In this document: positions 6,209 to 64,000 of the stretch, piece by piece
Layout: each line of letters opens with the position of its first letter
Numbering within the stretch: position 1 is the first letter of the stretch
Assembly (NCBI GenBank): GCA_965655095.1
Contig: OZ296648.1
Coordinates: 23,064,001 to 23,128,000, forward strand
Origin: Haplodiscus bocki
Taxonomy: Eukaryota
Reading direction: 5' to 3'
Length of the DNA: 64,000 bases
Translations under genes and position numbers: made by a program
Notes under the pieces: model-generated
What the model saw: only the letters and a program-made list of their open reading frames with translations
Databases searched by the model: none
Told to the model about the DNA's origin: nothing

Positions 6209-6250
6209 AATTGAAAATTCTGACAATTTCAGTGAAATCATAAAAATTTA

Positions 6251-6542: not shown

Positions 6543-7145
<603 letters not shown>

Positions 7146-18195: not shown

Positions 18196-18236
18196 TTTCA
18201 GGGCTCTGAAAATTTTGAACCAAATTTGACACTAAC

Positions 18237-19267: not shown

Positions 19268-19269
19268 CT

Positions 19270-22285: not shown

Positions 22286-22406
22286 ACGAAAAATGTACCA
22301 GCTGCAGTTAATTCTGAAAAAAAGCATGATGCTAACTAAGACCGAAGATAAGACATTACCATAAATTGAAAAAAATACTCAAAAACAATCAAAAAAAATT
22401 CCTTAC

Positions 22407-23473
22407 GTCAAAAACTTGTTCTGATCTAAATGGCTCTTGTAAATATCAGCGGGAAGTTTGGGTTCCATGATATCTAATTCTCTAGCAAGAGCCAAAAAGT
22501 TTCCATTCAGCTTTCCATTAGTCATGATTTCTTTCAGTTCGTCAACGTCAGCATCTTCTTCAGAAACATTCATAGCTTCAAGTTCCAAGTAGATCTGTTG
22601 TCGTCCCAACATGAAAGACAATTGCTTCTGTAATTGACTGGTTTGGGATGATTCAAAAACGTCGACCATCAAAGTTGTATCGTTCAAACACATAGCGAGA
22701 CGCATGGCATCCGGCAATTTATCGAATTTACGGTAAATTTTATAAGCACATTTCAACAAGTTAGTATTCTCGGGTTCAGCGACATACTTCACACAACTAA
22801 TCAAGTACAGACAAACTCGACTGTACGTGTTGATATCACAATACTCAACAAGCGCGTCCAAATTCTCGATCTCCATGAGAATATCACATGCATCGGATTC
22901 AGCGTTGTGCTGCATAAAATAGGGAACAATTTCTTTTACTATATTCTGTAGTTCATCTCGTTTATCGTTCACATCAGCAGCTTCGACATCAAGAGAGTTC
23001 CACACAGTGCCTATTTCGTTTGATACATGTAAAACGTACTCATGGCCCCATGATCCTATGGCTTCACGAGACCCAAGTTTTCGGTAATTCAAACAATCAT
23101 TATCTTCTGAGCAAACCATCGCCAACACTGACAAAATATCAGCGCACAGCTTTCGATTTTCCTGCGAATCTAACTTGAAGTATACCTCTTCTTTCAAAAG
23201 TTTATAATGGGGCATTAAAAACTTCAAAGGTTTAGGAACAGATGTCATTGAATTCGTTGATTCACGTAGCTTAGACCGGAGCAGTTCAAGAGCATCTTTC
23301 TGCTCCACTTGAGAAGCATTCTGTAATTTTTCGACAGTGGTATTCAACTCTTCCTGTAAAGCTTTATCCTCCTCAGAAAGTTCTGGGGGCGCATCTTTTT
23401 TCAATGCGGTTTTCTCCGAATCGCCAGAACTTTTTTCTTGTTGTGAAGTAGATTTAGATTCAAGAGGAGCCAT
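22407..23473 (-). CDS. PSMD2: PSMD2/RPN1 coding exon 1 (spliced CDS 2820 nt, 939 aa)
   Basis: ELSEEDKALQEEL...STNSMTSVPKPLKFL...WGHEYV...HNAESDACDILMEIE...ARELDIMEPKLPADIYKSHL; donor GTAAGG at 22406. ATG at 23473 preferred because acceptor ttcttttttcag lies 5 nt upstream. Confidence 0.95.
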
Positions 23474-24379
23474 CAGGTCTGAAAAAAGAACTGCAATCAT
23501 TTAAAGTTCGTTCTAGTTCATATCGGCTGTTATATTTAGTCAACACTTCCACGAGAAAAGCTCCCGACCATTACAATTTTCTTTATTGTAAAAACACAGA
23601 ACTCTTTTCATGGAAAACAATTTTCTTCCGGAATTGCCCATGTCCACCTCATTATGACCAGTGATCAGCATCGATTTATTGGCAATATTATTTCATTGGA
23701 GCTACCTGCAATGATAGAATTGTGATTGCCACACAATGATCAGAGAAGAATCATTGATGAGGAAAAATCAAAAGGCATTGCCATCAATTGGCAGGTCAAA
23801 AATCACAAAATTCAGTTGTACAGTCTGCAGAGAACTTTATCGAGAGAAGAACTATCTCAGAGGTCATTGCATTATAGGCTCTGAGATACAATCATCCTAT
23901 GACTGCAAAATATCCAGAAAAATTTTTTACGCTCACCATCAGATCTGAAACAAGACTACTCGCTACGAACTTTGTTGTAGATTTTTCACCTGGAGCGTAC
24001 TTTTTTGGAAACCTTTTAATCAAATTTGGCATTTTTGGAACTTAAAAATTGCTGATTTCTTGCAAAGACCTCTAATTCTGGTGGAAAAGATATTGCAAGT
24101 AAAAAATTATATAACTACCGTACGCTTGTACTACGCTTGTTCTATTCATGACCTCGAACGATGATAGGAACTGACAGATGTAAGGACATGTGAGCCTGGA
24201 TATATGTTCTTCAAATCCCATGTACTTGCGGGATACTCTCCACAGTTTCTTCAGCCAGAGTTCTCCACCGTTGTGTAGTCGGCAGTTTTTGGGGTTGGTC
24301 GTTGATTCAGGACTCGAGGATTTTGGAATCTCCATTGAAGTTGATCAGTTCTACGATTCGATCTTCGTCGTAAATGTCA

Positions 24380-24545
24380 GGGTACAATTATTTGTCTGAT
24401 CTGTGCTCGATGTCTCTCACCCTAAAAAAGGAAGTGTCGCGAAGTTTCTTCCCCTTTTTGGCCTATGCAATTTCGTGACAGCACTAAGCTGCAATTGTAA
24501 CCGGTTTGCAAGGCTCTGACACCTATAGAGTAGTAACCTGTGGAT
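24380..24545 (-). mobile_element. 3' remnant of the founder non-LTR retrotransposon ORF2 (degenerate CCHC zinc knuckle)
   Basis: Minus translation YNCSLVLSRNCIGQKGEETSRHFLF*GERHRAQIR; GGC and GGT are each one substitution from Cys, giving C-x-C-x8-H-x4-C with the typical ETxxHxL. Confidence 0.65.
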
Positions 24546-27500
24546 TGGTCTTAAAACGCCAAGCGCTTGCTTGACAAGTTTGCTCTTGGTCGTGTAAAGG
24601 AAGCAAAACTTGTTCCGTGGAAGACATGAAAGTGGAGTCTGATCAAAGTTTTAGGGCACAAATCCCACTCGAAGTCCAAGTGCTTAGCTCTTGACTGAGA
24701 AGGATGTTGGGTGGACATTTCATGTTTTTTCCACGGGATTTGAATGACAACCTGGAGTCAAACTTTATGCCTGGAATCCTGTAGCTATCTGAACTTAAAA
24801 AATAATAAACAGCCAATTTTTTTGCGATATCACATTTATGTCTAGAGAGCCGATTGGAACAAGTACAGTTTTCTTTATGCCCATAATGCGCCGCCGCTTG
24901 GTGCAGAAAAGAGAAATTTCATGAGGGCTGTTCTTGTTCGTCCGTCTAATTCGACATTGGTGTTTGTACTGATCAAGAGTCTGCCATCATTCGAACATTC
25001 GAACTTCTCCACTTCTATTCTGCAAAACATTTCCGAAACAAAAACAGCAGACAATACAGGTGAAAGAACTGCACCCTGTAGCGTTCCGATGTTGGTTTTG
25101 AACGTTTCACTTTTCGTGGTCGCCAATTCCAAAGTATGAACTACGGTTGTTGAGGAACTCCCGAAGGAAGTCAAAGAGGTGGCCAGAAATTCCGATGTTG
25201 TTACGCTTCCACAGTAGTCCATTCACCCAGACAGCGTCGAGGGCATTTTAAAGGTCCATTGATATAAAAGCGCCAAATAGATTTCTCGTTGTCAAGATTT
25301 TGCAATCAGTCATCATTCGGTACAAAACTTGTAGGGTGCTCTTGTGTTCTTCGGATCCAGATCCAAACGATTTTTTTGTTCTGCAAAGTCTCTGACCAAT
25401 CAATCTAGCGCAATTTTGAAAATTTTTCCAACATCGCTGGATGCTGTGATGGAGCGGTATGACGAAAGTCTGGAGTATTTCGTTTTCCTTGGTTTCCAAA
25501 GAAGTACGACTTTGCGGCTTTCCCGTGGACAGGTTTTTGTTCAATCCTTTTTTGATCTGTTGAATCTTGAGTTCGGTGAATTTAGGTCCAGTCCTCTCCA
25601 GCATTTTTCCCTGAACATTGTTCGTGTCAAAGACTGTGGGCAGTTGTTTGGTTGCGTAGTTTTCTCCTTGCCAGCTCAGAGGTCGTTGCACCCGTGGGTT
25701 TCATCCCTTCTTGTACAGTTTTTCCACTTTTTGGCTTATGCAGTTTCGTGAGGGCACTAAGCTGCAATTGTAACCACAGTTTGCAAGGCTCTGATACCTA
25801 TAGAGCTTTAACCTGTGGATTGTTTTTGTAAAATCAGAGTGCAAGACAGGCGAAGCCATAGGTTTCAGTTCCGATTCTTGGATTGGCACTGGTGTTGAAA
25901 TACTCTGCTCAATTCTTCTTCGTCTTAAGGTCCGTTTGTGGTCAAAAAATGTACTACACCTGCACGGTTGTCGTTCTACTCATTGCAAATTGTGACTTTT
26001 TCGGGGTCTTTAAAATCCTGCATCCTTGCTTCACAGTCTTGCCTTGGTACTCCATTACACAGCTTTTCACGTTGTCGTTTGATAGCATTTTTGGGGAACC
26101 TTGCTTTCAGTCTCTCGCAGTGTGGGTCTAGCGGGGGCGGGGGGTCTCGGCTAAAACAACCCACTGCAGTTGCTACTCGATATTAAAACGCCTGGCGCTT
26201 GCTTGACAATTTCGCTCCTGGTAGTGTAAAGGAAGCAAAATTTTTTCCGTGCTCACAGTGGCGCTTCGTATAATTTTTTTGCCATGAAGTCATGAAAGTG
26301 GAGTCTGCTCAGTGTTTTAGGGCACAATACCCACTCGAATTCTAAGCGCTTAGTTCTTGCCTGAGAGTGATGTTAGGTGGACATTTCATGTTTTTTCCAA
26401 GGGATTTGAATGACAACCTGGAGTCAAACTTCATGCCTGGAATCTTGTAGCTATCGGAACTTAAAAAATGTTAAACAGCCAATTTTTTTGCGGAATTACG
26501 TTTATGTCTAGAGAGCTGGTTGGAACAATTACAGTTTTCTCTATGCTCAAATTGAGCCGCCGCTTGGTGCAGAAAGGAGAAATTTCTTGACGGCTGTTCT
26601 GGTTCGTCCGTCTAATTCGACATTGGTGTTTGCACTGATCAAGATTCTGCCATCATTCGAACATTCGAACTTCTCCACTTCTATTCTGCAAAACATTTCC
26701 GAAACAAAGTCAGCAGACAATACAGGTGAGAGAACTGCACCCTGTAGCGTTCCGATGTTGGTTTTGAACGTTTCACTTTTCGTGGTCGCCAATTCCAAAG
26801 TATGAACTACGGTTGTTGAGGAACTTCCGAAAGAAGCCAAAGAAGTGGCCAGAAATTCCAATGTTGTTACGCTTCCACAGTAGTCCATTCACCCAGACAG
26901 CGTCGACGGCTTTTTAAATTTCCATTGATATCAAAGCGCCAAGTAAATTTCTCGTTGTCAAGAATTTGCATTCAATCACCATTCGGTACAAAATTTGTAG
27001 GATGCTCTTGTGTTCTTCTGATCCAGATCCGAACGATTCTTTTGTTCTGCAAAGGCTCTGATCAATCAATCTAGCGCATTTTTGAATAATTTTCCAACAT
27101 CGCTGGATACTGTGATGGAGCGGTATGACGAAAGTCTGGAGTATTTGGTCTTCCCTGGTTTCCAAAGAAGTACGATTTTGCGGTTTTCCCGTGGACAGAT
27201 TTTTGTTCAACCCACTTTTGATCTGTTGAAGCATGAGTTCGCTGAAATTAGGTCCAGCCCTCCCCAGTATTTTTGCCTGAACAATGTTTGTGCCCAAGAC
27301 GGTGGGGAATTGTTTGATTGCCTAGTTTTCTTGCCAGCTCAAGGGTCGTTGCACCTGTGGGTTTCATCCCTGCTTGTACAGCTTCTTCCCCTTTTTGGCC
27401 TATGCATATTCATGAGGGCACTGAGCTGCAATTGTAAACGCAGTTTGCAAGGCTCTGACACCTACAGAGTAGTAGCCTGTGGATTGTTTATGTAAAATCA

Positions 27501-30500
27501 GAGTACAAGACAGGCGAAGCCATAGGTTTCAGTTTCGATTTTTGGATTGGTACTGGTGTTGAAATACTCTGCTCAATTTTCCTTCGTCTTCCGGTCCATT
27601 TGTTGTCAAAAAAGATAATACACCTGCACGGTTGTCGTTATCTTCACTGCAAATTGTGACTTCTTCGAAGTCTTCAAAATCTTGAATCCTTGCTTCACAG
27701 TCTTGCCTTGGGACTCCACTACACAGCTTTTCAATTTGTCGTTTGATAGCATTTTTTGGGGAACCTTGCTTTCTGTCTCTCGCAGTGTGGGTCTAGCGGG
27801 GCGGGGGGTCTCGGCTAAAACAACCCACTGCAGTTGCTACTCGATATTAAAACGCCTGGCGCTTGCTTGACAAGTTCGCTCCTGGTAGTGTAAAGGAAGC
27901 AAAATTTTTTCCGTGCTCACAGTGGCGCTTCGTATAAGTTTTTTGTCAGGAAGTCATGAAAGTGGAGTCTGCTCAGTGTTTTAGGGCACAATACCCACTC
28001 GAATTGTAAGCGCTTAGTTCTTGCATGAGATTGATATTAGGTGGACATTTCATATTTTTTCCAAGGGATTTGAATGACAACCTGGAGTCAAACTTCATGC
28101 CTGGAATCTTGTAGCTATCGGAACTTAAGAAACGTTAAACAGCCGATTTTTTTGCGGAATTACGTTTATGTCTAGAGAGCTGGTTGGAACAATCACAGTT
28201 TTCTCCATGCTCATATTGAGCCGCCGCTTGGTGCAGAAAGGAGAAATTTCATGAGGGCCGATCTTGTTCGTCCGTCTAATTCGACATTGGTGTTTGCACT
28301 GATCAAGAGTATGCCATCATCCGAACATTCGAACTTCTCCACTTCTATTCTGCAAAACATTTCCGAAACAAAATCAGCAGACAATACAGGTGAGAGAACT
28401 GCACCCTGCAGCGTTCCGATGTTGGTTTTGAACGTTTCACTTTTCGTGGTCGCCGCTTGCAAAGTATGAACTGCGGTTGTTGAGGAACTTCCGAAAGAAG
28501 CCAAAGAAGTGGCCAGAAATTCCGATGTTGTTACGCTTCCACAGTATTCCATTCAACCAGACAGCGTCGAAGGCTTTTTAAATGTTCATTGATATCAAAG
28601 CGCCAAGTAGATTTCTCGTTGTCAAGAAATTGCAGTCAATCATCATTTGGTACAAAACTTGTAGGGGGCTCTTGTGTTCTTCGGATCCAGATCCAAACGA
28701 TTCTTTTGTTCTGCAAAGGCTCTGATCAATCAATCTAGCGCATTTTTGAATAGTTTTCCAACATCGCCGGATACTGTGATGGAGTGGTATGATGAAAGTC
28801 TGGAGTATTTGGTCTTCCCTGGTTTCCAAGGAAGTACGTTTTTGCGGTTTTCCCGTGGACAGATTTTTGTTCAACCCACTTTTGATCTGTTGAAGCATGA
28901 GTTCGCTGAAATTAGGTCCAGCCCTCCCCAGTATTTTTGCCTGAACAATGTTTGTGCCCAAGACGGTGGGGAATTGTTTGATTGCCTAGTTTTCTCCTTG
29001 CCAGCTCAGGGGTCGTTGCACCTGTGGGTTTCATCCCTGCTTGTACAGCTTCTTCCCCTTTTTGGCCTATGCATATTCGTGAGGGCACTGAGCTGCAATT
29101 GTAAACGCAGTTTGCAAGGCTCTGACACCTATAGAGTAGAAGCCTGTGGGTTGTTTATGTAAAATCAGAGTGCAAGACAAGCGAAGCCATAGGTTTCAGT
29201 TTCGATTTTTGGATTGGTACTGGTGTTGAAATACTCTGCTCAATTTTCCTTCGTCTCCCGGTCCATTTGTGGTCAAAAAAGATAATACACCTGCACGGTT
29301 GTCGTTCTCTTCAATGCAAATTGTGACTTCTTCGAAGTCTTCAAAATCCTGAATCCTTGCTTCCAGTCTTGCCTTGGGCCTCCACTACACAGCTTTTCAC
29401 GTTGTCGTTTGATAGCATTTTTTGGGGAACCTTGCTTTCAGTCTCTCGCAGTGTGGGTCTAGCGGGGGCGGGGGGTCTCGGCTAAAACAACCCACTGCAG
29501 TTGCTACTCGATATTAAAACGCCTGGCGCTTGCTTGACAATTTCGCTCCTGGTAGTGTAAAGGAAGCAAAATTTTTTCCGTGCTCACAGTGGCGCTTCGT
29601 ATAAGTTTTTTGTCAGGAAGACATGAATGTGGAGTCTGCTCAGTGTTTTAGGGCATAATACCCACTCGAATTCTAAGCGCTTAGTTCTTGCCTGAGAGTG
29701 ATGTTAGGTGGACATTTCATGTTTTTTCCAAGGGATTTGAATGACAACCTGGTGTCAAACTTCATGCCTGGAATCTTGTAGCTATCGGAACTTAAGAAAC
29801 GTTAAACAGCCGATTTTTTTGCGGAATTACGTTTATGTCTAGAGAGCTGGTTGGAACAATTACAGTTTTCTCTATGCTCAAATTGAGCCGCCGCTTGGTG
29901 CAGAAAGGAGAAATTTCATGAGGGCTGTTCTTGTTCGTCCGTCTAATTCGACATTGGTGTTTGCACTGATCAAGAGTATGCCATCATCCGAACATTCGAA
30001 CTTCTCCACTTCTATTCTGCAAAACATTTCCGAAACAAAATCAGCAGACAATACAGTTGAGAGAACTGCACCCTGCAGCGTTCCGATGTTGGCTTTGAAC
30101 GTTTCACTTTTCGTGGTCGCCGCTTCCAAGGTATGAACTGCGGTTGTTGAGGAACTTCCGAAAGAAGCCAAAGAAGTGGCCAGAAATTCCGATGTTGTTA
30201 CGCTTCCACAGTAGTCCATTCACCCAGACAGCGTCGAAAGCTTTTTAAATGTTCATTGATATCAAAGCGCCAAGTAGACTTCTCGTTGTCAAGAATTTGC
30301 AGTCAATCGTCATTCGGTACAAAACTTGTAGGATGCTCTTGTGTTCTTCGGATCCAGATCCAAACGATTCTTTTGTTCTGCAAAGGCTCTGATCAATCAA
30401 TCTAACGCATTTTTGAATAATTTTCCAACATCGCTGGATACTGTGATGGAGCGGTATGACGAAGGCATTGAGTAATTCGTTTTCCCTGGTTTCCAAAGAA

Positions 30501-33500
30501 GTACGACATTGCAGTTTTCACATGGACAGATTTTTTTCTATCCAATTTTGAACTGTTGAAGCCTGAGTTCGCTGAAACTAGGTCCAGCCCTCTCCAGCAT
30601 TTTGGCCTGAACAATGTTTGTGTCAAAGACTGTGGGAAGTTGTTTGATTGCGTAGTTTTCTCCTTGCCAGCTCAGAGGTCGTTGCACCCGTGGGTTTCAT
30701 CCCTGCTTGTACAGCTTCTTCCACTTTTTGGTCTATGCATATTCGTGAGGGCACTGAGCTGCAATTGTAAACGCAGTTTGCAAGGCTCTGACACCTATAG
30801 AGCAGTGGCCTGTGGATTGTTTATGTAAAATCAGAGTGCAAGACAGGCGAAGCCATAGGTTTCAGTTTCGATTTTTGGATTGGTACCGGTGTTGAAATAC
30901 TCTGCTCAATTTTCCTTCGTCTTCGCGTCCATTTGTGGTCAAAAAAGGTAATACACCTGCACGGTTGTCGTTCTCTTCACTGCAAATTGTGACTTCTTCG
31001 AAGTCTTCAAAACCCTGAATCCGTGCTTCACAGTCTTGCCTTGGGACTCCACTACACAGCTTTTCACGTCGTTTGATAGCATTTTTTGGGGAACCTTGCT
31101 TTCAGTCTCTCGCAGTGTGGGTCTAGCGGGGGCGGGGGGTCTCGGCTAAAACAACCCACTGCAGTTGCTACTCAATATTAAAACGCCTGACGCTTGCTTG
31201 ACAAGTTCGCTCCTGGTAGTGTAAAGGAAGCAAAATTTTTTCCGTGCTCACAGTGGCGCTTCGTATAAGTTTTTTGTCAGGAAGTCATGAAAGTGGAGTC
31301 TCCTCAGTGTTTTAGGGCACAATACCCACTCGAATTCTAAGCGCTTAGTTCTTGCCTGAGAGTGTTGTTATGTTGACATTTCATGTTTTTCCAAGGGATT
31401 TGAATGACAACCTGGAGTCAAACTTCATGCCTGGAATCTTGTAGCTATCGGAACATAAAAAATGTTAAACAGCCAAAATTTTTGCGGAATTACGTTTATG
31501 TCTAGAGAGCTGGTTGGAACAATTACAGTTTTCTCTATGCTCAAATTGAGCCGCCGCTTGGTGCAGAAAGGAGAAATTTCTTGAGGGCTGTTCTGGTTCG
31601 TCCGTCTAATTCGACATTGGTGTTTGCACTGATCTGCCATCATTCGAACATTCGAACTTCTCCACTTCTATTCTGCAAAACATTTCCGAAACAAAATCAG
31701 CAGACAATACAGGTGAGAGAACTGCACCCTGCAGCGTTCCGATGTTGGTTTTGAACGTTTCACTTTTCGTGGTCGCCGCTTGCAAGGTATGAAATGCGGT
31801 TGTTGAGGAACTTCCGAAAGAAGCCAAAGAAGTGGCCGGAAGTTCCGATGTTGTTACGCTTCCACAGTAGTCCATTCACCCAGACATCGTCGAAGGGTTT
31901 TTAAATGTTCATTGATATCAAAGCGCCAAGTAGATTTCTCGTTGTCAAGAAATTGCAGTCAATGATCATTCGGTACAAAACTTGTAGGGTGCTCTTGTGT
32001 TCTTCGGATCCAGATCCAAACGATCCTTTTGTTCTGCAAAAGCTCTGAGCAATGCATCTAGCGCACTACTGAATAATTTTCCAACATCGGTGGATAATGT
32101 GATGGAGCGGTATGACGAAGGCATTGAGTAATTCGTTTTCCCTGGTTTCCAAAGGAGTACGACTTTGCAGTTTTCACATGGACAGATTTTTTGCTCTGTC
32201 CATTTTTGATTTGTTGAAGCCTGAGTTCGCTGAAACTAGGTCCAGCCCTCTCCAGCATTTTGGCCTGAACAATGTTTGTGTCAAAGACTGTGGGAAGTTG
32301 TTTGATTGCGTAGCTTTCTCCTTGCCAGCTCAGAGGTCGTTGCACCCGTGGGTTTCATCCCTGCTTGTACAGCTTCTTCCCCTTTCTGGTCTATGCATAT
32401 TCGTGAGGGCACTGAGCTGCAATTGTAAACGCAGTTTGCAAGGCTCTGACACCTATAGAGCAGTGGCCTGTGGATTGTTTATGTAAAATCAGAGTGCAAG
32501 ACAGGCGAAGCCATAGGTTTCAGTTTCGATTTTTGGATTGGTACCGGTGTTGAAATACTCTGCTCAATTTTCCTTCGTCTTCGCGTCCATTTGTGGTCAA
32601 AAAAGGTAATACACCTGCACGGTTGTCGTTCTCTTCACTGCAAATTGTGACTTCTTCGAAGTCTTCAAAACCCTGAATCCGTGCTTCACAGTCTTGCCTT
32701 GGGACTCCACTACACAGCTTTTCACGTCGTTTGATAGCATTTTTTGGGGAACCTTGCTTTCAGTCTCTCGCAGTGTGGGTCTAGCGGGGGCGGGGGGTCT
32801 CGGCTAAAACAACCCACTGCAGTTGCTACTCGATATTAAAACGCCTGGCGCTTGCTTGACAAGTTCGCTCCTGGTAGTGTAAAGGAAGCAAAATTTTTTC
32901 CGTGCTCACAGTGGCGCTTCGTATTAGTTTTTTGTCAGGAAGTCATGAAAGTGGAGTCTGCTCAGTGTTTTAGGGCACAATACCCACTCGAATTCTAAGC
33001 GCTTAGTTCCTGCCTGAGAGTGATGTTAGGTGGACATTTCATGTTTTTCCAAGGGATTTGAATGACAACCTGGAGTCAAACTTCATGCCTGGAATCTTGT
33101 AGCTATCGGAACTTAAGAAACGTTAAACAGCCGATTTTTTTGCGGAATTACGTTTATGTCTAGAGAGCTGGTTGGAACAATTACAGTTTTCTCTATGCTC
33201 AAATTGAGCCGCCCCTTGGTGCAGAAAGGAGAAATTTCATGAGGGCTGTTCTTGTTCGTCCGTCTAATTCGACATTGGTGTTTGCACTGATCAAGATTCT
33301 GCCATCATTAGAACATTCGAACTTCTCCACTTCTATTCTGCAAAACATTTCCGAAACAAAATCAGCAGACAATACATGTGAGAGAACTGCACCCTGCAGC
33401 GTTCCGATGTTGGTTTTGAACGTTTCACTTTTCGTGGTCGCCGCTTGCAAAGTATGAACTGCGGTTGTTGAGGAACTTCCGAAAGAAGCCAAAGAAGTGG

Positions 33501-36500
33501 CCAGAACTTCCGATGTTGTTACGCTTCCACAGTAGTCCATTCAACCAGACAGCGTCGAAGGCTTTTTACATGTTCATTGATATCAAAGCGCCAAGTAGAT
33601 TCCTCGTTGTCAAGAAATTGCAGTCAATCATCATTCGGTACAAAACTTGTAGGGTGCTCTTGTGTTCTTCGGATCCAGATCCAAACGATCCTTTTCTTCT
33701 GCAAAGGCTCTAAGCAATCAATCTAGCGCACTTTTGAATAATTTTCCAACATTCGTGGATAATGTGATGGAGCGGCATGACGAAGGCATCGAGTAATTCG
33801 TTTATCTGGTTTCCAAAGAAGTACGACTTTGCAGTTTTCACATGGACAGATTTTTTTCCATCCAATTTTGAACTGTTGAAGACTGAGTTCGCTGAAACTA
33901 GGTCCAGCCCTCTCCAGCATTTTGGCCTGAACAATGTTTGCGTCAAAGACTGTGGGAAGTTGTTTGATTGCGTAGTTTTCTCCTTGCCAGCTCAGAGGTC
34001 GTTGCACCGGTGGGTTCCATCCCTGCCTGTACAGTTTTTCCACTTTTTGGCTTATGCAGTTTCGTGAGGGCACTAAGTTGCAATTGTAACCACAGTTTGC
34101 AAGGCTCTGACACCTATAGAGCAGTGGCCTGTGGATTGTTTATGTAAAATCAGAGTGCAAGACAGGCGAAGCCATAGGTTTCAGTTTCGATTTTTGGATT
34201 GGTACCGGTGTTGAAATACTCTGCTCAATTTTCCTTCGTCTTCGCGTCCATTTGTGGTCAAAAAAGGTAATACACCTGCACGGTTGTCGTTCTCTTCACT
34301 GCAAATTGTGACTTCTTCAAAGTCTTCAAAATCCTGAATCCTTGCTTCACAGTCTTGCCTTGGGTCTCCACTACACAGCTTTTCACGTTTTCGTTTGATA
34401 GCATTTTTTGGGGAATCTTGCTTTCAGTCTCTCGCAGTGTGGGTCTAGCGGGGGCGGGGGGTCTCGGCTAAAACAACCCACTGCAGTTGCTACTCGATAT
34501 TAAAACGCCTGGCGCTTGCTTGACAAGTTCGCTCCTGGTAGTGTAAAGGAAGCAAAATTTTTTCCGTGCTCACAGTGGCGCTTCGTATTAGTTTTTTGTC
34601 AGGAAGTCATGAAAGTGGAGTCTGCTCAGTGTTTTAGGGCACAATACCCACTCGAATTCTAAGCGCTTAGTTCCTGCCTGAGAGTGATGTTAGGTGGACA
34701 TTTCATGTTTTTTCCAAGGGATATGAATGACAACCTGGAGTCAAACTTCATGCCTGGAATCTTGTAGCTATCGGAACTTAAAAAATGTTAAACAGCCAAT
34801 TTTTTTGCGGAATTACGTTTATGTCTAGAGAGCTGGTTGTAACAATTACAGTTTTCTCTATGCTCAAATTGAGCCGCCGCTTGGTGCAGAAAGGAGAAAT
34901 TTCATGAGGGCTGTTCTTGTTCGTCCGTCTAATTCGACATTGGTGTTTGCACTGATCAAGAGTATGCCATCATCCGAACATTCGAACTTCTCCACTTCTA
35001 TTCTGCAAAACATTTCCGAAAAAAAAATCAGCAGACAATACAGGTGAGAGAACTGCACCCTGCAGCGTTCCGATGTTGGTTTTGAACGTTTCACTTTTCG
35101 TGGTCGCCGCTTGCAAAGTATGAACTGCGGTTGTTGAGGAACTTCCGAAAGAAGCCAAAGAAGTGGCCAGAAATTCCGATGTTGTTACGCTTCCACAGTA
35201 GTCCATTCAACCAGACAGCGTCGAAGGCTTTTTACATGTTCATTGATATCAAAGCGCCAAGTAGATTCCTCGTTGTCAAGAAATTGCAGTCAATCATCAT
35301 TCGGTACAAAACTTGTAGGGTGCTGTTGTGTTCTTCGGATCCAGATCCAAACGATCCTTTTCTTCTGCAAAGGCTCTAAGCAATCAATCTAGCGCATTTT
35401 TGAATATTTTTCCAACATCGGTGGATAATGTGATGGAGCGGTATGACGAAGGCATTGAGTAATTCGTTTTCCCTGGTTTCCAAAGAAGTACGACTTTGCA
35501 GTTTTCACATGGACAGATTTTTTTTCTATCCAATTTTGAACTGCTGAAGCCTGAGTTCGCTGAAACTAGGTCCAGCCTTCTCCAGCATTTTGGCCTGAAC
35601 AATGTTTGTGTCAAAGACTGTGGGAAATTGTTTGATTGCTTAGTTTTCTCCTTGCCAGCTCAGAGGTCGTTGCACCCGTGGGTTTCATCCCTGCTTGTAC
35701 AGCTTCTTCCCCTTTTTGGCCTATGCATATTCGTGAGGGCACTGAGCTGCAATTGTAAACGCAGTTTGCAAGGCTCTGACACCTATAGAGTAGTGGCCTG
35801 TGGATTGTTTATGTAAAATCAGAGTGCAAGACAAGCGAAGCCATAGGTTTCAGTTTCGATTTTTGGATTGGTACTGGTGTTGAAATACTCTGCTCAATTT
35901 TCCTTCGTCTTCCGGTCCATTTGCGGTCGAAAAAGATAATACACATGCACGGTTGTCAATCTCTTCACTGCAAATTGTGACTTCTTCGAAGTCTTCAAAA
36001 TCCTGAATCCTTGCTTCACAGTCTTGCCTTGGGCCTCCACTACACAGCTTTTCACGTTGTCGTTTGATAGCATTTTTTGGGGAACCTTGCTTTCAGTCTG
36101 TCGCAGTGTGGGTCTAGCGGGGCGGGGGGTCTCGGCTAAAACAACCCACTGCAGTTGCTACTCGGTATTAAAACGCCTGGCGCTTGCTTGACAAGTTCGC
36201 TCCTGGTAGTGTAAAGGAAGCAAAATTTTTTCCGTGCTCACAGTGGCGCTTCGTATAAGTCTTTTGTCAGGAAGACATGAAAGTGGAGTCTGCTCACTGT
36301 TTTAGGGCACAAAACCCACTCGAATTCCAAGCGCTTAGTTCTTGCTTGAGAGTGATGTTAGGTGGACATTTCATGTTTTTTCCAAGGGAGTTGAATGACA
36401 ACCTGGACTCAAACTTCATGCCTGGAATCTTGTAGCTATCGGAACTTAAAAAATGTTAAACAGCCAATTTCTTTGCGGAATTACGTTTATGTCTAGAGAG

Positions 36501-39500
36501 CTGTTTGGAACAATTTTAGTTTTCTCTATGCTCAAAATGAGCCGCCGCTTGGTGAAGAAAGGAGAAGTTTTGTGAGGGCTTTTCTTGTTCGTCCGTCTAA
36601 TTCAACATTGGTGTTTGCACTGATCACGAGTATGCCATCATCCGAACATTCGAACTTCTCCACTTCTATTCTGCAAAACATTTCCGAAACAAAATCAGCA
36701 GACAATACAGGTGAGAGAACTGCACCCTGCAGCGTTCCGATGTTGGTTTTGAACGTTTCACTTTTCGTGGTCGCCGCTTGCAAAGTATGAAATGCGGTTG
36801 TTGACGAACTTCCGAAAAAAGCCAAAGAAGTGGCCAGAAATTCCGATGTTGTTACGCTTCCACAGTAGTCCATTCACCCAGACAGCGTCGAAGGCTTTTT
36901 AAATGTTCATTGATATCAAAGCGCCAAGAAGAGTTCTCGTTGTCAAGAAATTGCAGTCAATCATCATTCGGTACCAAACTTGTAGGGTGCTCTTGTGTTC
37001 TTCGGATCCAGATCCAAACGATCCTTTTGTTCTGCAAAGGCTCTGAGCAATCAATCTAGCGCACTTTTGAATAACTTTCCAACATCGGTGGATAATGTGG
37101 TGGAGCGGTATGACGAAGACATTGAGTAATTCGTTTTCCCTGGTTTCCAAAGAAGGACGACTTTGCAGTTTTCACATGGACAGATTTTTTTCTATCCAAT
37201 TTTGAACTGTTGAAGCCTGAGTTCGCTGAAACTAGGTCCAGCCCTCTCCAGCATTTTGGCCTGAACAATGTTTGTGTCAAAGACTGTGGGAAGTTGTTTG
37301 ATTGCGTAGTTTTCTCCTTGCCAGCTCAGAGGTCGTTGCACCCGTGGGTTTCATCCCTGCTTGTACAGCTTCTTCCCCTTTTTGGCCTATACATGTTCGT
37401 GAGGGCACTGAGCTGCAATTGTAAACGCAGTTTGCAAGGCTCTGACACCTATAGAGTAGTGGCCTGTGGATTGTTTATGTAAAATCAGAGTGCAAGACAG
37501 GCGAAGCCATAGGTTTCAGTTTCTATTTTTGGATTGGTACTGGTGTTGAAATACTCTGCTCAATTTTCCTTCGTCTTCCGGTACATTTGCGGTCGAAAAA
37601 GATAATACACATGCACGGTTGTCAATCTCTTCACTGCAAATTGTGACTTCTTCGAAGTCTTCAAAATCCTGAATCCTTGCTTCACAGTCTTGCCTTGGGC
37701 CTCCACTACACAGCTTTTCACGTTGTCGTTTGATAACATTTTTTGGGGACCCTTGCTTTCAGTCTCTCGCAGTGTGGGTCTAGCGGGGCGGGGGGTCTCG
37801 GCTAAAACAACCCACTGCAGTTGCTACTCGGTATTAAAACGCCTGGCGCTTGCTTGACAAGTTCGCTCCTGGTTGTGTAAAGGAAGCAAAATTTTTTCCG
37901 TGCTCACAGTGGCGCTTCGTATAAGTCTTTTGTCAGGAAGACATGAAAGTGGAGTCTGCTCAGTGTTTTAGGGCACAATACCCACTTGAATTCTAAGCGC
38001 TTAGTTCTTGCCTGAGAGTGATGTTAGGTGGACATTTCATGTTTTTTCCAAGGGATTTGAATGACAACCTGGACTCAAACTTCATGCCTGGAATCTTGTA
38101 GCTATCGGAACTTAAAAAATGTTAAACAGCCAATTTCTTTGCGGAATTACGTTTATGTCTAGAGAGCTGTTTGGAACAATTTTAGTTTTCTCTATGCTCA
38201 AAATGAGCCGCCGCTTGGTGAAGAAAGGAGAAATTTTGTGAGGGCTTTTCTTGTTCGTCCGTCTAATTCAACATTGGTGTTTGCACTGATCACGAGTATG
38301 CCATCATCCGAACATTCGAACTTCTCCACTTCTATTCTGCAAAACATTTCCGAAACAAAATCAGCAGACAATACAGGTGAGAGAACTGCACCCTGCAGCG
38401 TTCCGATGTTGGTTTTGAACGTTTCACTTTTCGTGGTCGCCGCTTGCAAAGTATGAATTGCGGTTGTTGACGAACTTCCGGAAAAAGCCAAAGAAGTGGC
38501 CAGAAATTCCGATGTTGTTACGCTTCCACAGTAGTCCATTCACCCAGACAGCGTCGAAGGCTTTTTAAATGTTCATTGATATCAAAGCGCCAAGAAGAGT
38601 TCTCGTTGTCAAGAAATTGCAGTCAATCATCATTCGGTACAAAACTTGTAGGGTGCTCTTGTGTTCTTCGGATCCAGATCCAAACGATCCTTTTGTTCTG
38701 CAAAGGCTCTGAGCAATCAATCTAGCGCACTTTTGAATAACTTTCCAACATCGGTGGATAATGTGGTGGAGCGGTATGACGAAGACATTGAGTAATTCGT
38801 TTTCCCTGGTTTCCAAAGAAGGACGACTTTGCAGTTTTCACATGGACAGATTTTTTTCTATCCAATTTTGAACTGTTGAAGCCTGAGTTCGCTGAAACTA
38901 GGTCCAGCCCTCTCCAGCATTTTGGCCTGAACAATGTTTGTGTCAAAGACTGTGGGAAGTTGTTTGATTGCGTAGTTTTCTCCTTGCCAGCTCAGAGGTC
39001 GTTGCACCCGTGGGTTTCATCCCTGCTTGTACAGCTTCTTCCCCTTTTTGGCCTATACATGTTCGTGAGGGCACTGAGCTGCAATTGTAAACGCAGTTTG
39101 CAAGGCTCTGACACCTATAGAGTAGTGGCCTGTGGATTGTTTATGTAAAATCAGAGTGCAAGACAGGCGAAGCCATAGGTTTCAGTTTCTATTTTTAGAT
39201 TGGTACCACTGTTGAAATACTCTGCTCAATTTTCCTTCGTCTTCCGGTCCATTTGTGGTCAAAAAAGATAATACACCTGCACGGTTGTCGTTCTCTTCAC
39301 TGCAAATTGTGACTTCTTCGAAGTCTTCAAAATCCTGAATCCTTGCTTCACAGTCTTGCCTTGGGCCTCCACTACACAGCTTTTCACGTTGTCGTTTGAT
39401 AACATTTTTTGGGGACCCTTGCTTTCAGTCTCTCGCAGTGTGGGTCTAGCGGGGCGGGGGGTCTCGGCTAAAACAACCCACTGCAGTTGCTACTCGGTAT

Positions 39501-42500
39501 TAAAACGCCTGGCGCTTGCTTGACAAGTTCGCTCCTGGTTGTGTAAAGGAAGCAAAATTTTTTCCGTGCTCACAGTGGCGCTTCCTATAAGTCTTTTGTC
39601 AGGAAGACATGAAAGTGGAGTCTGCTCAGTGTTTTAGGGCACAAAACCCACTCGAATTCTAAGCGCTTAGTTCTTGCTTGAGATTGATGTTAGGTGGACA
39701 TTTCATGTTTTTTCCAAGGGATTTGACTGACAACCTGGAGTCAAACTTCATGCCTGGAATCTTGTACCTATCGGAACTTAAAAAATGTTAAACAGCCACT
39801 TTCTTTGCGGAAGTACGTTTATGTCTAGAGAGCTGTTTGGAACAATTTTAGTTTTCTCTATGCTCAAAATGAGCCGCCGCTTGGTGAAGAAAGGAGAAAT
39901 TTTGTGAGGGCTTTTCTTGTTCGTCCGTCTAATTCAACATTGGTGTTTGCACTGATCACGAGTATGCCATCATCCGAACATTCGAACTTCTCCACTTCTA
40001 TTCTGCAAAACATTTCCGAAACAAAATCAGCAGACAATACAGGGGAGAGAACTGCACCCTGCAGCGTTCCGATGTTGGTTTTGAACGTTTCACTTTTCGT
40101 GGTCGCCGCTTGCAAAGTATGAACTGCGGTTGTTGAGGAACTTCCGAAAGAAGCCAAAGAAGTGGCCAGAAACTCCGATGTTGTTACGCTTCCACAGTAG
40201 TCCATTCACCCAGACAGCGTCGAAGGCTTTTTAAATATTCATTGATATCAAAGCGCCAAGTAGATTTCTCGTTGTCGAGAATTTGCATTCAATCATCATT
40301 CGGTACAAAATTTGTAGGGTGCTCTTGTGTTCTTCGGATTCAGATCCAAACAATTTTTTTGTTCTGCAAAGTCTCTGACCAATCTTCCTAGCGGACTTTT
40401 AAATAATTTTCCAACATAGCTGGATACTGTGATTGGGCGGTATGACGAAGGTCTGGAGTAATTCTTTTTCCCTGATTTCCAAAGAAGGACGACTTTGCAG
40501 TTTTCACATGGACAGATTTTTTGCTCTGTCCATTTTTGATTTGTTGAAGCCTGAGTTCGCTGAAACTAGGTCCAGTCTTCTCCAGCATTTTGGCCTGAAC
40601 AATGTTTGTGTCAAAGACTGTGGGAAATTGTTTGATTGCTTAGTTTTCTCCTTGCCAGCTCAGAGGTCGTTGCACCCGTGGGTTTCATCCCTGCTGGTAC
40701 AGCTTCTTCCCTTTTTTGGCCTATGCATATTCGTGAGGTCACTGAGCTGCAATTGTAAACGCAGTTTGCAAGGCTCTGACACCTATAGAGTAGAAGCCTG
40801 TGGGTTGTTTATGTAAAATCAGAGTGCAAGACAAGCGAAGCCATAGGTTTCAGTTTCGATTTTTGGATTGGTACTGGTGTTGAAATACTCTGCTCAATTT
40901 TCCTTCGTCTCCCGGTCCATTTGTGGTCAAAAAAGATAATACACCTGCACGGTTGTCGTTCTCTTCACTGCAAATTGTGACTTCTTCGAAGTCTTCAAAA
41001 TCCTGAATCCTTGCTTCACAGTCTTGCCTTGGGTCTCCACTACACAGCTTTTCACGTTGTCGTTTGATAGCATTCTTTGGGGAACCTTGCTTTCAGTCTC
41101 TCGCAGTGTGGGTCTAGCGGGGGCGGGGGGTCTCGGCTAAAACAACCCACTGCAGTTGCTACTCGATATTAAAACGCCTGGCGCTTGCTTGACAAGTTCG
41201 CTCCTGGTAGTCTAAAGGAAGCAAAATTTTTTCCGTGCTCACAGTGGCGCTTCGTATAGGTTTTTTGTCAGGAAGACATGAAAGTGGAGTCTGCTCAGTG
41301 TTCTAGGGCACAATACCCACACGAATTCTAAGCGCTTAGTTCTTGCCTGAGATTGATGTTAGGTGGACATTTCATGTTTTTTCCAAGTGAATTGAATGAC
41401 AACCTGGAGTCAAACTTCATGCCTGGAATCTTGTAGCTATCGGAACTTAAAAAATGATAAACAGCAACTTTTTTTGCGGAATTACGTTTATGTCTAGAGA
41501 GATGCTTGGACAAATTACAGTTTTCTCTATGCTCAAATTGAGCCGCCGCTTGGTGCAGAAAGGAGAAATTTCATGAGGGCTGTTCTTGTTCCTCCGTCTA
41601 ATTCGGCATTGGTGTTTGCACAGATCAAGAGTATGCCATCATCCGAATATTCGAACTTCTCCACTTCTATTCTGCAAAACATTTCCGAAACAAAATCAGC
41701 AGACAATACAGGTGAGAGAACTGCACCCTGCAGCGTTCCGATGTTGGTTTTGAACGTTTCACTTTTCATGGTCGCCGCTTGCAAGGTATGAGCTGCGGTT
41801 GTTGACGAACTTCTGAAAGAAGCCAAAGAAGTGGCCAGAAATTCCGATGTTGTTACGCTTCCACAGTAGTCCATTCAACCAGACAGCGTCGATGGCTTTT
41901 TACATGTTCATTGATATCAAAGCGCCAAGTAGATTTCTCGTTGTCAAGAAATTGCAGTCAATCATCATTCGGTACAAAACTTGTAGGGTGCTGTTGTGTT
42001 CTTTGGATCCAGATCCAAACGATCCTTTTCTTCTGCAAAGGCTCTAAGCAATCAATCTAGCGCACTTTTGAATATTTTTCCAACATCGGTGGATAATGTG
42101 ATGGAGCGGTATGACGAAGGCATTGAGTAATTCGTTTTCCTTGGTTTCCAAAGAAGTACGACTTTGCAGTTTTCACATGGACAGATATTTTTTCTATCCA
42201 ATTTTGAACTGTTGAAGCCTGAGTTCGCTGAAACTAGGTCCAGCCCTCTCCAGCATTTTGGCCTGAACAATGTTTGTGTCAAAGACTGTGGGAAGTTGTT
42301 TGATTGCGTAGTTTTCTCCTTGCCAGCTCAGGGGTCGTTGCAGCCGTGGGTTTCATCCCTGCTTGTAGAGCTTCTTCCCTTTTTTGGCCTATGCATATTC
42401 GTGAGGGCACTGAGCTGCAATTGTAAACGCAGTTTGCAAGGCTCTGACACCTATAGAGTAGTAGCCTGTGGATTGTTTATGTAAAATCAGAGTGCAAGAC

Positions 42501-45500
42501 AGGCGAAGCCATAGGTTTCAGGTTCGATTTTTGGATTGGTGTTGGTGTTGAAATTCTCTGCTCAATTGTTTTTCGTCTTCCGGTCCATTTGTGTTCAAAA
42601 AAGATAATACACCTGCATGGTTGTTGTTATCTTCACTGCAAATTGTGACTTTTTTTGAAGTCTTTAAAATCTTCAATCCTTGTTTCACAGTCTTGCCTTG
42701 GGACTCCACTACACAGCTTTTCACGTTGGCGTTTGATATCCTTTTTTGGCGAAACTTGCTTTCAGTCTCTCGCAGTGTGGGTCTAGTGGGGGCGGGGGGT
42801 CTCGGCTAAAACAACCCAATGCAGTTGCTACTCGATATCAAAACGCCTAGCGCTTGCTTGAGAAGTTTGCTCGTGGTGGTGTAAAGGAAGCAAAACTTTT
42901 TCCGTGCTCGCAGTGCCGCTTCGTATGATTTTTTTTGTCAAGAAGACGTGAATATGGAGTCTGATCAATGTTTTGAGGCAAAATTCCCACTCGGTATCTA
43001 AGTGTTTAGCTCTTGCCTGAGAGTGATGTTGGGTGGACATTTCATGTTTTTTCCAAGGGATTTGAATGAAAACCTGGAGTCAAACTTCATGCCTGGAATC
43101 TTGTAGCTATCGGAACTTAAAAAAAGTTAAACAGCCAATTTTTTTGCGGAATTACGTTTATGTCTAGAGAGCTGGTTGGAACAATCACAGTTTTCTCCAT
43201 GCTCATATTGAGCCGCCGCTTGGTGCAGAAAGGAGAAATTTCATGAGGGCTGATCTTGTTCGTCCGTCTAATTCGACATTGGTGTTTGCACTGATCAAGA
43301 GTATGCCATCATCCGAACATTCGAACTTCTCCACTTCTATTCTGCAAAACATTTCCGAAACAAAATCAGCAGACAATACAGGGGAGAGAACTGCACCCTG
43401 CAGCGTTCCGATGTTGGTTTTGAACGTTTCACTTTTCGTGGTCGCCGCTTGCAAAGTATGAACTGCGGTTGTTGAGGAACTTCCGAAAGAAGCCAAAGAA
43501 GTGGCCAGAAACTCCGATGTTGTTACGCTTCCACAGTAGTCCATTCACCCAGACAGCGTCGAAGGCTTTTTAAATGTTCATTGATATCAAAGCGCCAAGT
43601 AGATTTCTCGTTGTCGAGAATTTGCATTCAATCATCATTCGGTACAAAATTTGTAGGGTGCTCTTGTGTTCTTCGGATTCAGATCCAAACAATTTTTTTG
43701 TTCTGCAAAGTCTCTGACCAATCAATCTAGCGGACTTTTAAATAATTTTCCAACATAGCTGGATACTGTGATTGGGCGGTATGACGAAGGTCTGGAGTAA
43801 TTCTTTTTCCCTGATTTCCAAAGAAGGACGACTTTGCAGTTTTCACATGGACAGATTTTTTTCTATCCAATTTTGAACTGTTGAAGCCTGAGTTCGCTGA
43901 AACCAGGTCCAGCCCTCTCCAGCATTTTGGCCTGAACAATGTTTGTGTCAAAGACTGTGGGAAGTTGTTTGTTTGCGTAGTTTTCTCCTTGCCAGCTCAG
44001 GGGTCGTTGCAGCCGTGGGTTTCATCCCTCCTCGTAGAGCTTCTTCCCCTTTTTGGCCTATGCATATTCGTGAGAGCACTGAGCTGCAATTGTAAGCGCA
44101 GTTTGCAAGGCTCTGACACCTATAGAGTAGAAGCCTGTGGGTTGTTTATGTAAAATTAGAGTGCAAGACAAGCGAAGCCATAGGTTTCAGTTTCGATTTT
44201 TGGATTGGTACTGGTGTTGAAATACTCTGCTCAATTTTCCTTCGTCTCCCGGTCCATTTGTGGTCAAAAAAGATAATACACCTGCACGGTTGTCGTTCTC
44301 TTCACTGCAAATTGTGACTTCTTCGAAGTCTTCAAAATCCTGAAACCTTGCTTCACAGTCTTGCCTTGGGCCTCCACTACACAGCTTTTCACGTTGTCGT
44401 TTGATAGCATTTTTTGGGGAACCTTGCTTTCAGTCTCTCGCAGTGTGGGTCTAGCGGGGGCGGGGGGTCTCGGCTAAAACAACCCACTGCAGTTGCTACT
44501 CGATATTAAAACGCCTGGCGCTTGCTTGACAATTTCGCTCCTGGTAGTGTAAAGGAAGCAAAATTTTTTCCGTGCTCACATTGGCGCTTCGTATAAGTTT
44601 TTTGTCAGGAAGACATGAACGTGGAGTCTCCTCAGTGTTTTAGGGCACAATACCCACTCGAATTCTAAGCGCTTAGTTCTTGCCTGAGAGTGTTGTTATG
44701 TTGACATTTCATGTTTTTTCCGAGGGATTTGAAAGACAACCTGGAGTCAAACTTCATGCCTGGAACCTTGTAGCTATCGGAACTTAAAAAATGATAAACA
44801 GCAAATTTTTTTGCGGAATTACGTTTATGCCTAGAGAGCTGCTTGGACAAATTACAGTTTTCTCTATGCTCAAATTGAGCCGCCGTTTGGTGCAGAAAGG
44901 AGAAATTTCGTGAGGGCTGTTCTTGTTCGTCCGTCTAATTCGACATTGGTGTTTGCACTGATCAAGAGTATGCCATCATCCGAACGTTCGAACTTCTCCA
45001 CTTCTATTCTGCAAAACATTTCCGAAACAAAATCAGCAGACAATACATGTGAGAGAACTGCACCCTGCAGCGTTCCGATGTTGGCTTTGAACGTTTCACT
45101 TTTCGTGGTCCCCGCTTCCAAAGTATGAACTGCGGTTGTTCGGGAACTTCCGAAAGAAGCCAAAGAAGTGGCCAGAATTTCCGATGTTGTTACGCTTCGA
45201 CAGTGGTCCATTCACCCAGACAGCGTCGAAGGCTTTTTAAATGTTCATTGATATCAAAGCGCCAAGTAGATTTCTCGTTGTCGAGAATTTGCAGTCAATC
45301 GTCATTCGGTACAAAACTTTTAGGGTGCTCTTGTGTTCTTCGGATCCAGATCCAAACGATCCTTTTGTTCTGCAAAAGCTCTGAGCAATGAATCTAGCGC
45401 ACTACTGAATAATTTTCCAACATCGGTGGATAATGTGATGGAGCGGTATGACGAAGGCATTGAGTAATTCGTTTTCCGTGGTTTCCAAAGAAGTACGACT

Positions 45501-63500: not shown

Positions 63501-64000
63501 AAAGAAGCCAAAGAAGTGGCCAGAAATTCCGATGTTGTTACGCTTCCACAGTAGTCCATTCACCCAGACAGCGTCGAAGGCTTCTTAAAAGTTCATTGAT
63601 ATCAAAGCGCCAAGTAGACTTCTCGTTGTCAAGAATTTGCAGTCAATCATCATTCGGTACAAAACTTGTAGGGTGCTCTTGTGTTCTTCGGATCCAGATC
63701 CAAACGATCCTTTTGTTTTGCAAAAGCTCTGAGCAATGAATCTAGCGCACTACTGAATAGTTTTCCAACATCGGTGGATAATGTGATGGAGCGGTATGAC
63801 GAAGGCATTGAGTAATTCGTTTTCCCTGGTTTCGAAAGAAGTACGACTTTGCAGTTTTCACATGGACAGATTTTTTGCTCTGTCCATTTTTGATTTGTTG
63901 AAGCCTGAGTTCGCTGAAACTAGGTCCAGTCCTCTCCAGCATTTTGGCCTGAACAATGTTTGTGTCAAAGACTGTGGGAAATTGTTTGATTGCTTAGTTT
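24443..64000 (-). repeat. Tandem macrosatellite: 24 head-to-tail copies of a ~1667-bp LINE ORF2-derived unit (first copy ~390 bp shorter, last cut by the window end)
   Basis: Marker ORF M(D/E)(Y/H)C starts at 25222, 26888, 28552 ... 61891, 63559 with spacing 1656-1671; copies are highly similar with no spacers. Confidence 0.98.
27383..29049 (-). pseudogene. Representative unit: decayed non-LTR reverse transcriptase (pre-RT linker, RT, thumb, start of CCHC)
   Basis: RT motifs in colinear order across frames, pieced from several copies: NIVQAKMLERAGP; KVVLLWKPGKTNYSMPSSYRSITLSTDVGKLF; FGSGS; LISMNI*KAFDAVWVNGLLWK; GTLQGAVLSPVL; F(E)CSDD (YADD site); LNLSIEKT; YKIPGMKFDSRLSF. Many stops and frameshifts. 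Confidence 0.9.

What the first reader, a model, noticed from the sequence alone, without database searches (positions are those of the whole stretch)
24380..24500. Array edge preserves the founder's CCHC knuckle and reveals the amplification breakpoint
Inside the array the minus strand reads ...GGGGAAGAAGCT|GTACAAG (CIGQKGEE, then a jump to the pre-RT region). At the left edge it reads ...GGGGAAGAAACT|TCGCGACACTTCCTTTTT = CIGQKGEETSRHFLF*G, completing a degenerate C-x-C-x8-H-x4-C knuckle typical of non-LTR ORF2 C-termini. Each unit junction therefore cuts the knuckle in half and only the terminal copy keeps the native continuation. Inference: the array grew in place from this insertion, and its far end should continue into the upstream, endonuclease-side part of the same element.
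Basis: partly seen in the sequence, partly recalled or inferred. Interest (0 to 1): 0.7.

Follow-up and report, generated by a model that had tools for sequence, protein, structure and literature searches.

The report
LINE-derived tandem array, founder preserved
A 1.67-kb internal piece of an old, dead LINE retrotransposon was copied head to tail about 25 times in place, and the copy at the array's edge still runs into the element's normal tail; this is a well-preserved but ordinary example of how mobile elements give rise to satellite-like repeats.

Summary
On the minus strand, every internal unit junction joins the first half of the ORF2 C-terminal zinc knuckle to a site just upstream of the RT domain. 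Only the left-edge copy reads on past window position 24442/24443 into the second half of the knuckle.

27 of 29 dispersed relatives run straight through this breakpoint. All end at window 24200 with the family's usual 3' terminus and a short AT tail. The native continuation is therefore 243 nt (24200-24442), not only 24380-24442.

The array has 25 units and ends 1.7 kb beyond the window. The junction occurs nowhere else in the 1.5-Gb assembly. Edge units are the most diverged (85-93%) and central units are 93-100% identical, as expected for growth in place by unequal exchange.

The far end does continue into the same element, but not seamlessly:
- A 17-18-nt junction remnant replaces about 190 nt of the element.
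- About 380 nt of collinear element follow.
- A 17-kb Polinton-like insertion interrupts it.
- The endonuclease and the 3' part of ORF1 follow.
- A second insertion of about 30 kb interrupts it again.
- The 5' part follows.

Microhomology at the founding junction is at most 2 nt. This is a new member of a known kind (LINE-ORF2-derived tandem repeats) and of modest interest.

The parts
24200..24442 (-). Native 3' continuation of the founder LINE, kept only by the edge copy. It holds the second half of the ORF2 C-terminal knuckle (TSRHFLF, then a stop and Gly where relatives have Glu-Cys), the rest of the ORF2 C-terminus, the 3' UTR and the family's 3' terminus at 24200.
   Evidence: Dispersed copies match 24200-24547 contiguously. 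27 of 29 cross the breakpoint, and all end at the same terminus, often followed by an AT run. Protein alignment A4.
24443..24460 (-). Downstream breakpoint site P3: the last letters shared by all units, encoding ...KGEE. At the edge they are followed by native sequence; in all other units they are followed by GTACAAG (site P2).
   Evidence: Array units match the edge only from 24443 upward.
24443..25716 (-). Terminal unit u25, 1274 nt. It is the most diverged unit (85-88% to the others) and has an internal deletion of about 390 nt, corresponding to reference copy L064 positions 8137-8506.
25717..64000 (-). Units u24 to u03 (1658-1672 nt each) and most of u02. Each runs from the pre-RT site P2 through the degenerate RT core to the first half of the knuckle (P3). 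The array continues beyond the window to C1:23129727, the start of u01.
   Evidence: RT homology: a unit ORF against an RVT_1 protein gives E 1e-22; RVT_1 hits within units are sub-threshold.

Best explanation
A near-full-length copy of an old non-LTR retrotransposon inserted here on the minus strand. The element has an ORF1 with a PHD finger, a coiled coil and CCHC knuckles, and an ORF2 with an AP endonuclease, RT and a C-terminal knuckle.

Later, one illegitimate joint formed between a site inside the C-terminal knuckle codons (P3) and a site about 1.67 kb upstream, just before RT motif 0 (P2). This produced a tandem duplication of the intervening segment.

Once two 1.67-kb repeats existed, unequal sister-chromatid exchange or replication slippage expanded them to 25 units and keeps homogenising the centre. 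Some neighbouring units are 99-100% identical, while the edge units drifted.

Because the duplication was internal, the 3'-most unit stays fused to the founder's own last 243 nt, and the 5' side stays next to the founder's upstream sequence. The units are full of stops and frameshifts and the RT active-site box is mutated, so the array is non-coding DNA with no demonstrated function.

Shown: the anatomy, the native edges, the uniqueness of the junction and the identity gradient.
Inferred: the order of events and the recombination mechanisms.
For: - Identical internal junction in all units, and a unique native continuation at the left edge.
- Dispersed relatives are contiguous through P3 and end at 24200.
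- They match either side of the junction but never across it, and the junction-spanning form is found only at the 24 internal junctions of this locus.
- Collinear founder pieces lie in the same orientation beyond the far end. In coordinates of reference copy L064: 6811-7790 is adjacent to the array, 4871-6803 lies after a 17.1-kb insertion, and 3938-4874 lies after a second insertion.
- Edge units are 85-93% identical to the rest and central units 93-100%.
- Both edges keep the ancestral letter A in GAAGAAACT, while most internal junctions have G.
- Domain content: Exo_endo_phos_2 at 2e-6 in a relative; unit ORF against an RVT_1 protein at 1e-22; knuckle conserved in relatives.
- Short-read contigs of two samples bridge the left edge, and array pieces lie at many-fold the flank depth.
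Against: - The far end is not the seamless native edge that a simple internal duplication predicts. 17-18 nt of P3-side sequence sit between upstream site P1 and P2, and about 190 nt between P1 and P2 are missing. An extra event is needed, either before or after the duplication.
- Copy number rests on one assembly. Contig depth is only roughly consistent with it.
- The founder's target-site duplication could not be examined, because its 5' end lies beyond the DNA I could fetch.
Confidence: 0.88

Rival explanations
1. Seeding by a template switch. The first event was a microhomology-mediated repair or replication error at the far end. It replaced the 190 nt between P1 and P2 by a 17-18-nt copy of the P3 site, creating two short direct repeats 1.67 kb apart. 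Slippage or exchange between these repeats then made the first duplication. In this reading the far-end remnant is the original lesion, not a later deletion. This is a variant of the first step of the best explanation, not of the in-place growth.
For: The far end reads native P1, then 17-18 nt nearly identical to the knuckle-side end of a unit including the exact 10-mer GGAAGAAACT, then P2. Dispersed copies show this 10-mer is native only to P3, and that the native P2 site is preceded by different letters. A later random deletion would end within about 20 nt of a junction only about 1% of the time (inference from the 1667-nt unit length).
Against: Templated insertions usually copy from very near the break, not from 1.9 kb away. 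Seventeen nucleotides is short for unequal exchange. An A-run microhomology at both P1 and P3 could equally have guided a later deletion. No intermediate state has been observed.
Confidence: 0.35
2. Rolling-circle or extrachromosomal-circle origin. A circle closed at P3|P2 was amplified as a concatemer and re-integrated into the founder element.
For: There is a single identical junction in all units. The far end starts at an off-register point of the unit and is joined non-homologously to P1.
Against: The left edge is seamless and in register with the founder's own 3' end. The identity gradient from edges to centre, and blocks of near-identical neighbouring units, fit stepwise unequal exchange. 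No other integration site carries the junction.
Confidence: 0.07
3. Repeated independent retrotranspositions into the same spot (tandem insertions), or an assembly artefact.
For: Some non-LTR elements do form tandem arrays by repeated insertion (general knowledge). Long arrays are hard to assemble.
Against: Units lack the last 243 nt and the tail that every true insertion of this family carries, and all share one internal junction. Contigs built from short reads of two samples contain the left edge and the junction form, with array pieces at many-fold depth. Units differ by up to 15%, so they are not collapsed or duplicated reads.
Confidence: 0.03

Closest known systems
Satellite or tandem repeats derived from LINE ORF2 fragments: chicken HinfI/SCR1 from CR1, PROsat of Phodopus and Pvc20 of seal from L1 ORF2 (reviewed in PMC9659126)
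   Same: Tandem units are made of an internal coding part of a non-LTR element. Expansion and homogenisation are attributed to unequal exchange.
   Different: Here there is one locus only, 25 units with a long 1.67-kb monomer. The array is still embedded in its founder copy with both parental flanks identifiable, so the breakpoints can be read directly.
Tandem TE dimers as seeds of satellites
   Same: A first tandem pair of a TE sequence is the substrate for later expansion.
   Different: The junction here is internal-to-internal (knuckle to pre-RT). It is not 3' end to 5' end of two insertions.
Non-LTR retrotransposons with AP endonuclease, RT and a C-terminal CCHC motif, and an ORF1 with PHD and CCHC knuckles (clade not determined)
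   Same: Exo_endo_phos_2, RVT_1, a C-terminal C-x-C-x8-H-x4-C motif, ORF1 zf-CCHC and PHD, a common 3' terminus with a short AT tail, and many degraded dispersed copies.
   Different: No intact copy was seen in this genome; all examined copies have stops. Clade assignment (CR1, L2, Jockey or I-like) was not tested.
L1 5' inversion by twin priming
   Same: An inverted upstream segment of the element lies next to the direct 3' part.
   Different: Rejected. The inverted piece lies inside a TIR-bounded insertion. The founder's own upstream part is present in direct orientation beyond that insertion and abuts the direct part exactly at the insertion site.
Polinton/Maverick elements (for the two nested insertions)
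   Same: Size of 17 to about 30 kb, long terminal inverted repeats starting AG, 6-bp target duplications, and remnants resembling protein-primed DNA polymerase B.
   Different: The polymerase assignment rests on one language-model look-alike search only, and Pfam found nothing in the fragments. Integrase, ATPase and capsid genes were not sought.

Membership tests
Non-LTR (LINE) retrotransposon | Reverse transcriptase domain in ORF2 | tested here: met
   The unit ORF aligns to the RVT_1 region of P0004 at 53% identity, E 1e-22. P0004 matches RVT_1 at 6.6e-23. RVT_1 hits in unit ORFs themselves are sub-threshold, 0.0016-0.009. The active-site box is mutated in the units.
Non-LTR (LINE) retrotransposon | AP-type endonuclease upstream of RT | tested here: met
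   L067:6629-6994 matches Exo_endo_phos_2 at 2.1e-6, 28.0 bits against a cut-off of 27.4. The founder's corresponding part was identified by DNA homology at C1:23147310-23149131.
Non-LTR (LINE) retrotransposon | Dispersed copies sharing one 3' terminus with a simple tail | tested here: met
   More than 20 loci end at the same terminus, several followed by AT runs.
Non-LTR (LINE) retrotransposon | Target-site duplication flanking this insertion | not testable with these tools
ORF2 C-terminal CCHC knuckle | Conserved Cys/His spacing in relatives at the position cut by the junction | tested here: met
   P0004, L064 and L070 read C-x-C-x8-H-x4-C, and the window copy aligns with 2 of 4 ligands left. 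Metal binding was not tested.
TE-derived tandem array grown in place by unequal exchange | One identical head-to-tail junction, unique to the locus | tested here: met
   24 junction-spanning matches, all inside C1:23089637-23128134. Dispersed copies match one side only.
TE-derived tandem array grown in place by unequal exchange | Parental sequence continues natively at both edges | tested here: inconclusive
   The left edge is seamless. The far edge is collinear but has a 17-18-nt junction remnant and lacks about 190 nt.
TE-derived tandem array grown in place by unequal exchange | Edge units more diverged than central units | tested here: met
   u01 is 89-93% and u25 85-88% identical to the rest, the centre is 93-100%, and u03-u05 are identical.
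Polinton/Maverick (nested insertions T and T2) | Long TIRs and a 6-bp target-site duplication | tested here: met
   T: 160-nt TIRs at 74% identity, score 109 against a shuffle maximum of 30, and flanks sharing 4 of 6 letters. T2: TIRs of at least 457 nt at 86% identity, and a perfect AAAGTA duplication.
Polinton/Maverick (nested insertions T and T2) | Protein-primed DNA polymerase B, integrase, packaging ATPase and capsid genes | tested here: inconclusive
   The Atlas look-alike search gave DNA_pol_B_2 at score 0.95 for one 215-aa fragment. Pfam found nothing in 10 fragments. The other genes were not sought.

The most novel reading that the evidence does not exclude
The locus may preserve the complete birth record of a LINE-derived satellite, including the seeding lesion. 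In this reading a microhomology-mediated template switch copied 17-18 nt of the knuckle site next to the pre-RT site. That created the short direct repeats that started the first duplication of an array which is still expanding (identical neighbouring units), 0.7 kb upstream of a proteasome RPN1 gene.
Probability: 0.3. Interest if true: 0.45.

Novelty: new member of a known kind. Interest (0 to 1): 0.25.

Why it matters
Tandem repeats born from transposable elements are known, but the first step is rarely visible because founders decay or arrays spread. Here both parental flanks survive, so the founding breakpoints can be read to the nucleotide: at most 2 nt of microhomology, plus an odd 17-nt remnant at the far end. 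The identity gradient also shows how the array has evolved. This makes the locus a useful worked example for models of satellite birth, and a candidate copy-number-variable marker. It is not a new kind of system, and no function is indicated.

Tried and rejected
- TRF found no array because the period exceeds its limit. The repeat finder and my own scripts were used instead.
- Twin-priming 5' inversion was considered for the inverted endonuclease/ORF1 segment beyond the far end. It was rejected once the segment proved to lie inside a TIR-bounded insertion and the founder's own upstream part was found in direct orientation.
- Simple 5' truncation of the founder at L064 position 4871 was rejected. 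A second TIR element with a perfect 6-bp duplication sits there, and the element resumes in L036.
- Inversion by recombination between the TIR-like repeats, and a staggered-break inversion, were thought through and do not fit the order of the pieces.
- Microhomology of the type GAA(G/A)CT at both founding breakpoints is not supported by the dispersed copies.
- Pfam on short stop-free pieces gave nothing for most LINE pieces and for all pieces of the large insertion.
- The word-based protein search returned only five proteins, which did not help with clade or taxon.
- The scan's earlier findings had nothing for this place or topic.
- No RNA run holds the stretch, so expression is untested.
- N runs in L004, L023 and L036 were left as they are.

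Full report
**Coordinates**

The window is G000:C1:23064001-23128000 of a 1.5-Gb assembly. "Extended coordinates" below continue the window numbering beyond 64000, that is, C1 coordinate minus 23064000. The element reads on the minus strand.

**1. The observation**

From about 24443 to the window end the sequence is a head-to-tail array of units of about 1667 bp. TRF missed it because its longest period is 500.

All 23 internal junctions in the window read, on the minus strand, the first half of the knuckle (..CIGQKGEE) followed at once by GTACAAG and pre-RT sequence. Only the left-edge copy reads GAAGAAACT followed by TCGCGACACTTCC.

**2. Is the edge sequence the native continuation?**

A search of the whole genome with 24100-24560 found dozens of dispersed, 70-88% identical copies. 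They match 24200-24547 in one piece, whereas the array's own units match only from 24443 upward.

Re-alignment of 29 fetched loci shows that 27 cross the breakpoint. All that reach the end stop at the same terminus (..GAAGAACATATAT), often followed by an AT run. The window copy stops there too, at 24200.

In the window's own copy the second and fourth ligands are lost, and the Glu before the last Cys is now a stop.

Short-read contigs from two samples bridge flank, 3' end and breakpoint. Array pieces lie at many-fold the flank depth.

**3. What the unit is**

The unit runs from a site about 10 codons before RT motif 0 (P2), through a degenerate RT core, to the knuckle (P3).
- A unit ORF aligns to the RVT_1 domain of P0004 at 53% identity, E 1e-22. 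The unit has CSND where P0004 has FADD.
- Pfam hits inside the units are consistent but sub-threshold.
- Dispersed copies show the full element: an ORF1 with a PHD finger, a coiled coil and CCHC knuckles, then an AP endonuclease (Exo_endo_phos_2, 2e-6), RT and the C-terminal region.
- Every copy examined is broken by stops. The family is old.

**4. Array structure**

The array has 25 units and ends only 1.7 kb beyond the window, at extended coordinate 65727, the start of u01.
- Edge units are the most diverged: u01 is 89-93% and u25 85-88% identical to the rest.
- Central units are 93-100% identical. u03-u05 are identical and u10-u13 are 99-100% identical.
- u25 has an internal deletion of about 390 nt.
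- Both edges carry A in GAAGAAACT, where most internal junctions carry G.
- A 160-nt junction-spanning probe matches in full only the 24 internal junctions of this locus. Dispersed copies match one half or the other, with ends meeting within 2 nt.

**5. The founding breakpoints**

In dispersed copies the knuckle site reads ..GAAGAAACT followed by TCNCGACAC. The upstream site reads ..AACTCTCA, or ..TGTCT in L011, followed by GTACAAGC. The two sites therefore share at most CT. The founding joint was illegitimate, not homology-driven.

**6. The far end**

Upstream of u01 the sequence reads native element (..GGGTAAAA, site P1), then 17-18 nt nearly identical to the knuckle-side end of a unit, including the exact GGAAGAAACT, then GTACAAG. 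About 190 nt that four of five relatives carry between P1 and P2 are missing.

There are two readings. Either a later deletion ran from P1 into the first unit, or a primary template-switch event created a short direct repeat that seeded the duplication. I cannot decide between them.

**7. The element beyond the far end**

Positions below are in coordinates of reference copy L064.
- Collinear element sequence continues for about 380 nt, to position about 6811.
- A 17.1-kb element (T, extended 66122-83274) follows. It has 160-nt inverted termini (score 109 against a shuffle maximum of 30), flanks compatible with a 6-bp duplication, and an ORF fragment resembling protein-primed polymerase B.
- The founder then resumes exactly where it left off, with the endonuclease and the 3' part of ORF1 (6803-4871, extended 83276-85135).
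- A second, related element follows (T2, about 29.8 kb including an assembly gap). Its termini are at least 457 nt long and 86% identical, and it has a perfect AAAGTA duplication.
- The founder's 5' part follows (4874-3938, in L036).

**8. Verdict**

This is an in-place tandem amplification of an internal ORF2 segment of a resident, dead LINE. It was started by one illegitimate joint and expanded by unequal exchange. No function is indicated: the units are riddled with stops, and no RNA run holds the stretch.

Tandem repeats derived from LINE ORF2 fragments are already documented (PMC9659126). This is a new member of a known kind. Its value is that both parental flanks are preserved.

**Limits**

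Copy number rests on one assembly. The founder's target duplication and the LINE clade were not determined.

Noticed in passing
L051:3314-5054 (C1:23130314-23132054) and L069:291-1934 (C1:23147291-23148934): A 1.7-kb inverted copy of the founder LINE's endonuclease/ORF1 part lies just inside the left terminal repeat of the 17-kb nested element. It is 96.6% identical to the founder's own part 15 kb away. That is much younger than the nested element's own terminal repeats, which are 74% identical. The mechanism is unexplained.
   Followed up: partly
C1:23130122-23147274 (L051:3122 to L069:274), and C1:23149133 to about 23178957 (L069:2133 to L036:957): Two large TIR-bounded, Polinton/Maverick-like insertions are nested in the founder LINE. 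They are 17.1 kb and about 29.8 kb; the second contains a 200-N assembly gap. They have related termini starting AGTAG and 6-bp target duplications. One 215-aa fragment (L068:8291-8935) resembles protein-primed DNA polymerase B. Observed only.
   Followed up: partly
window 18232-19275 and 22403-23500, minus strand: Large exons of a proteasome RPN1/PSMD2-type gene (RPN1_RPN2_N at 1e-112; PC_rep). The first coding exon starts only about 700 bp from the LINE's 3' end, so the 41-kb array lies directly upstream of this gene.
   Followed up: partly
window 10384-12210, minus strand: A 608-aa open frame, Cys/His-rich at its N-terminus, with no Pfam match.
   Followed up: no
G000:C3:130778979-130781063: Two matches to the knuckle-side part of the same LINE family lie 1734 nt apart. 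This may be another small local duplication, but it does not carry this array's junction.
   Followed up: no
L064:121-226, and C1:23147110-23147226 (L069:110-226): The terminal-repeat sequence of the nested elements also occurs next to an unrelated LINE copy on another chromosome (73% identity), so this TIR family is dispersed in the genome.
   Followed up: no
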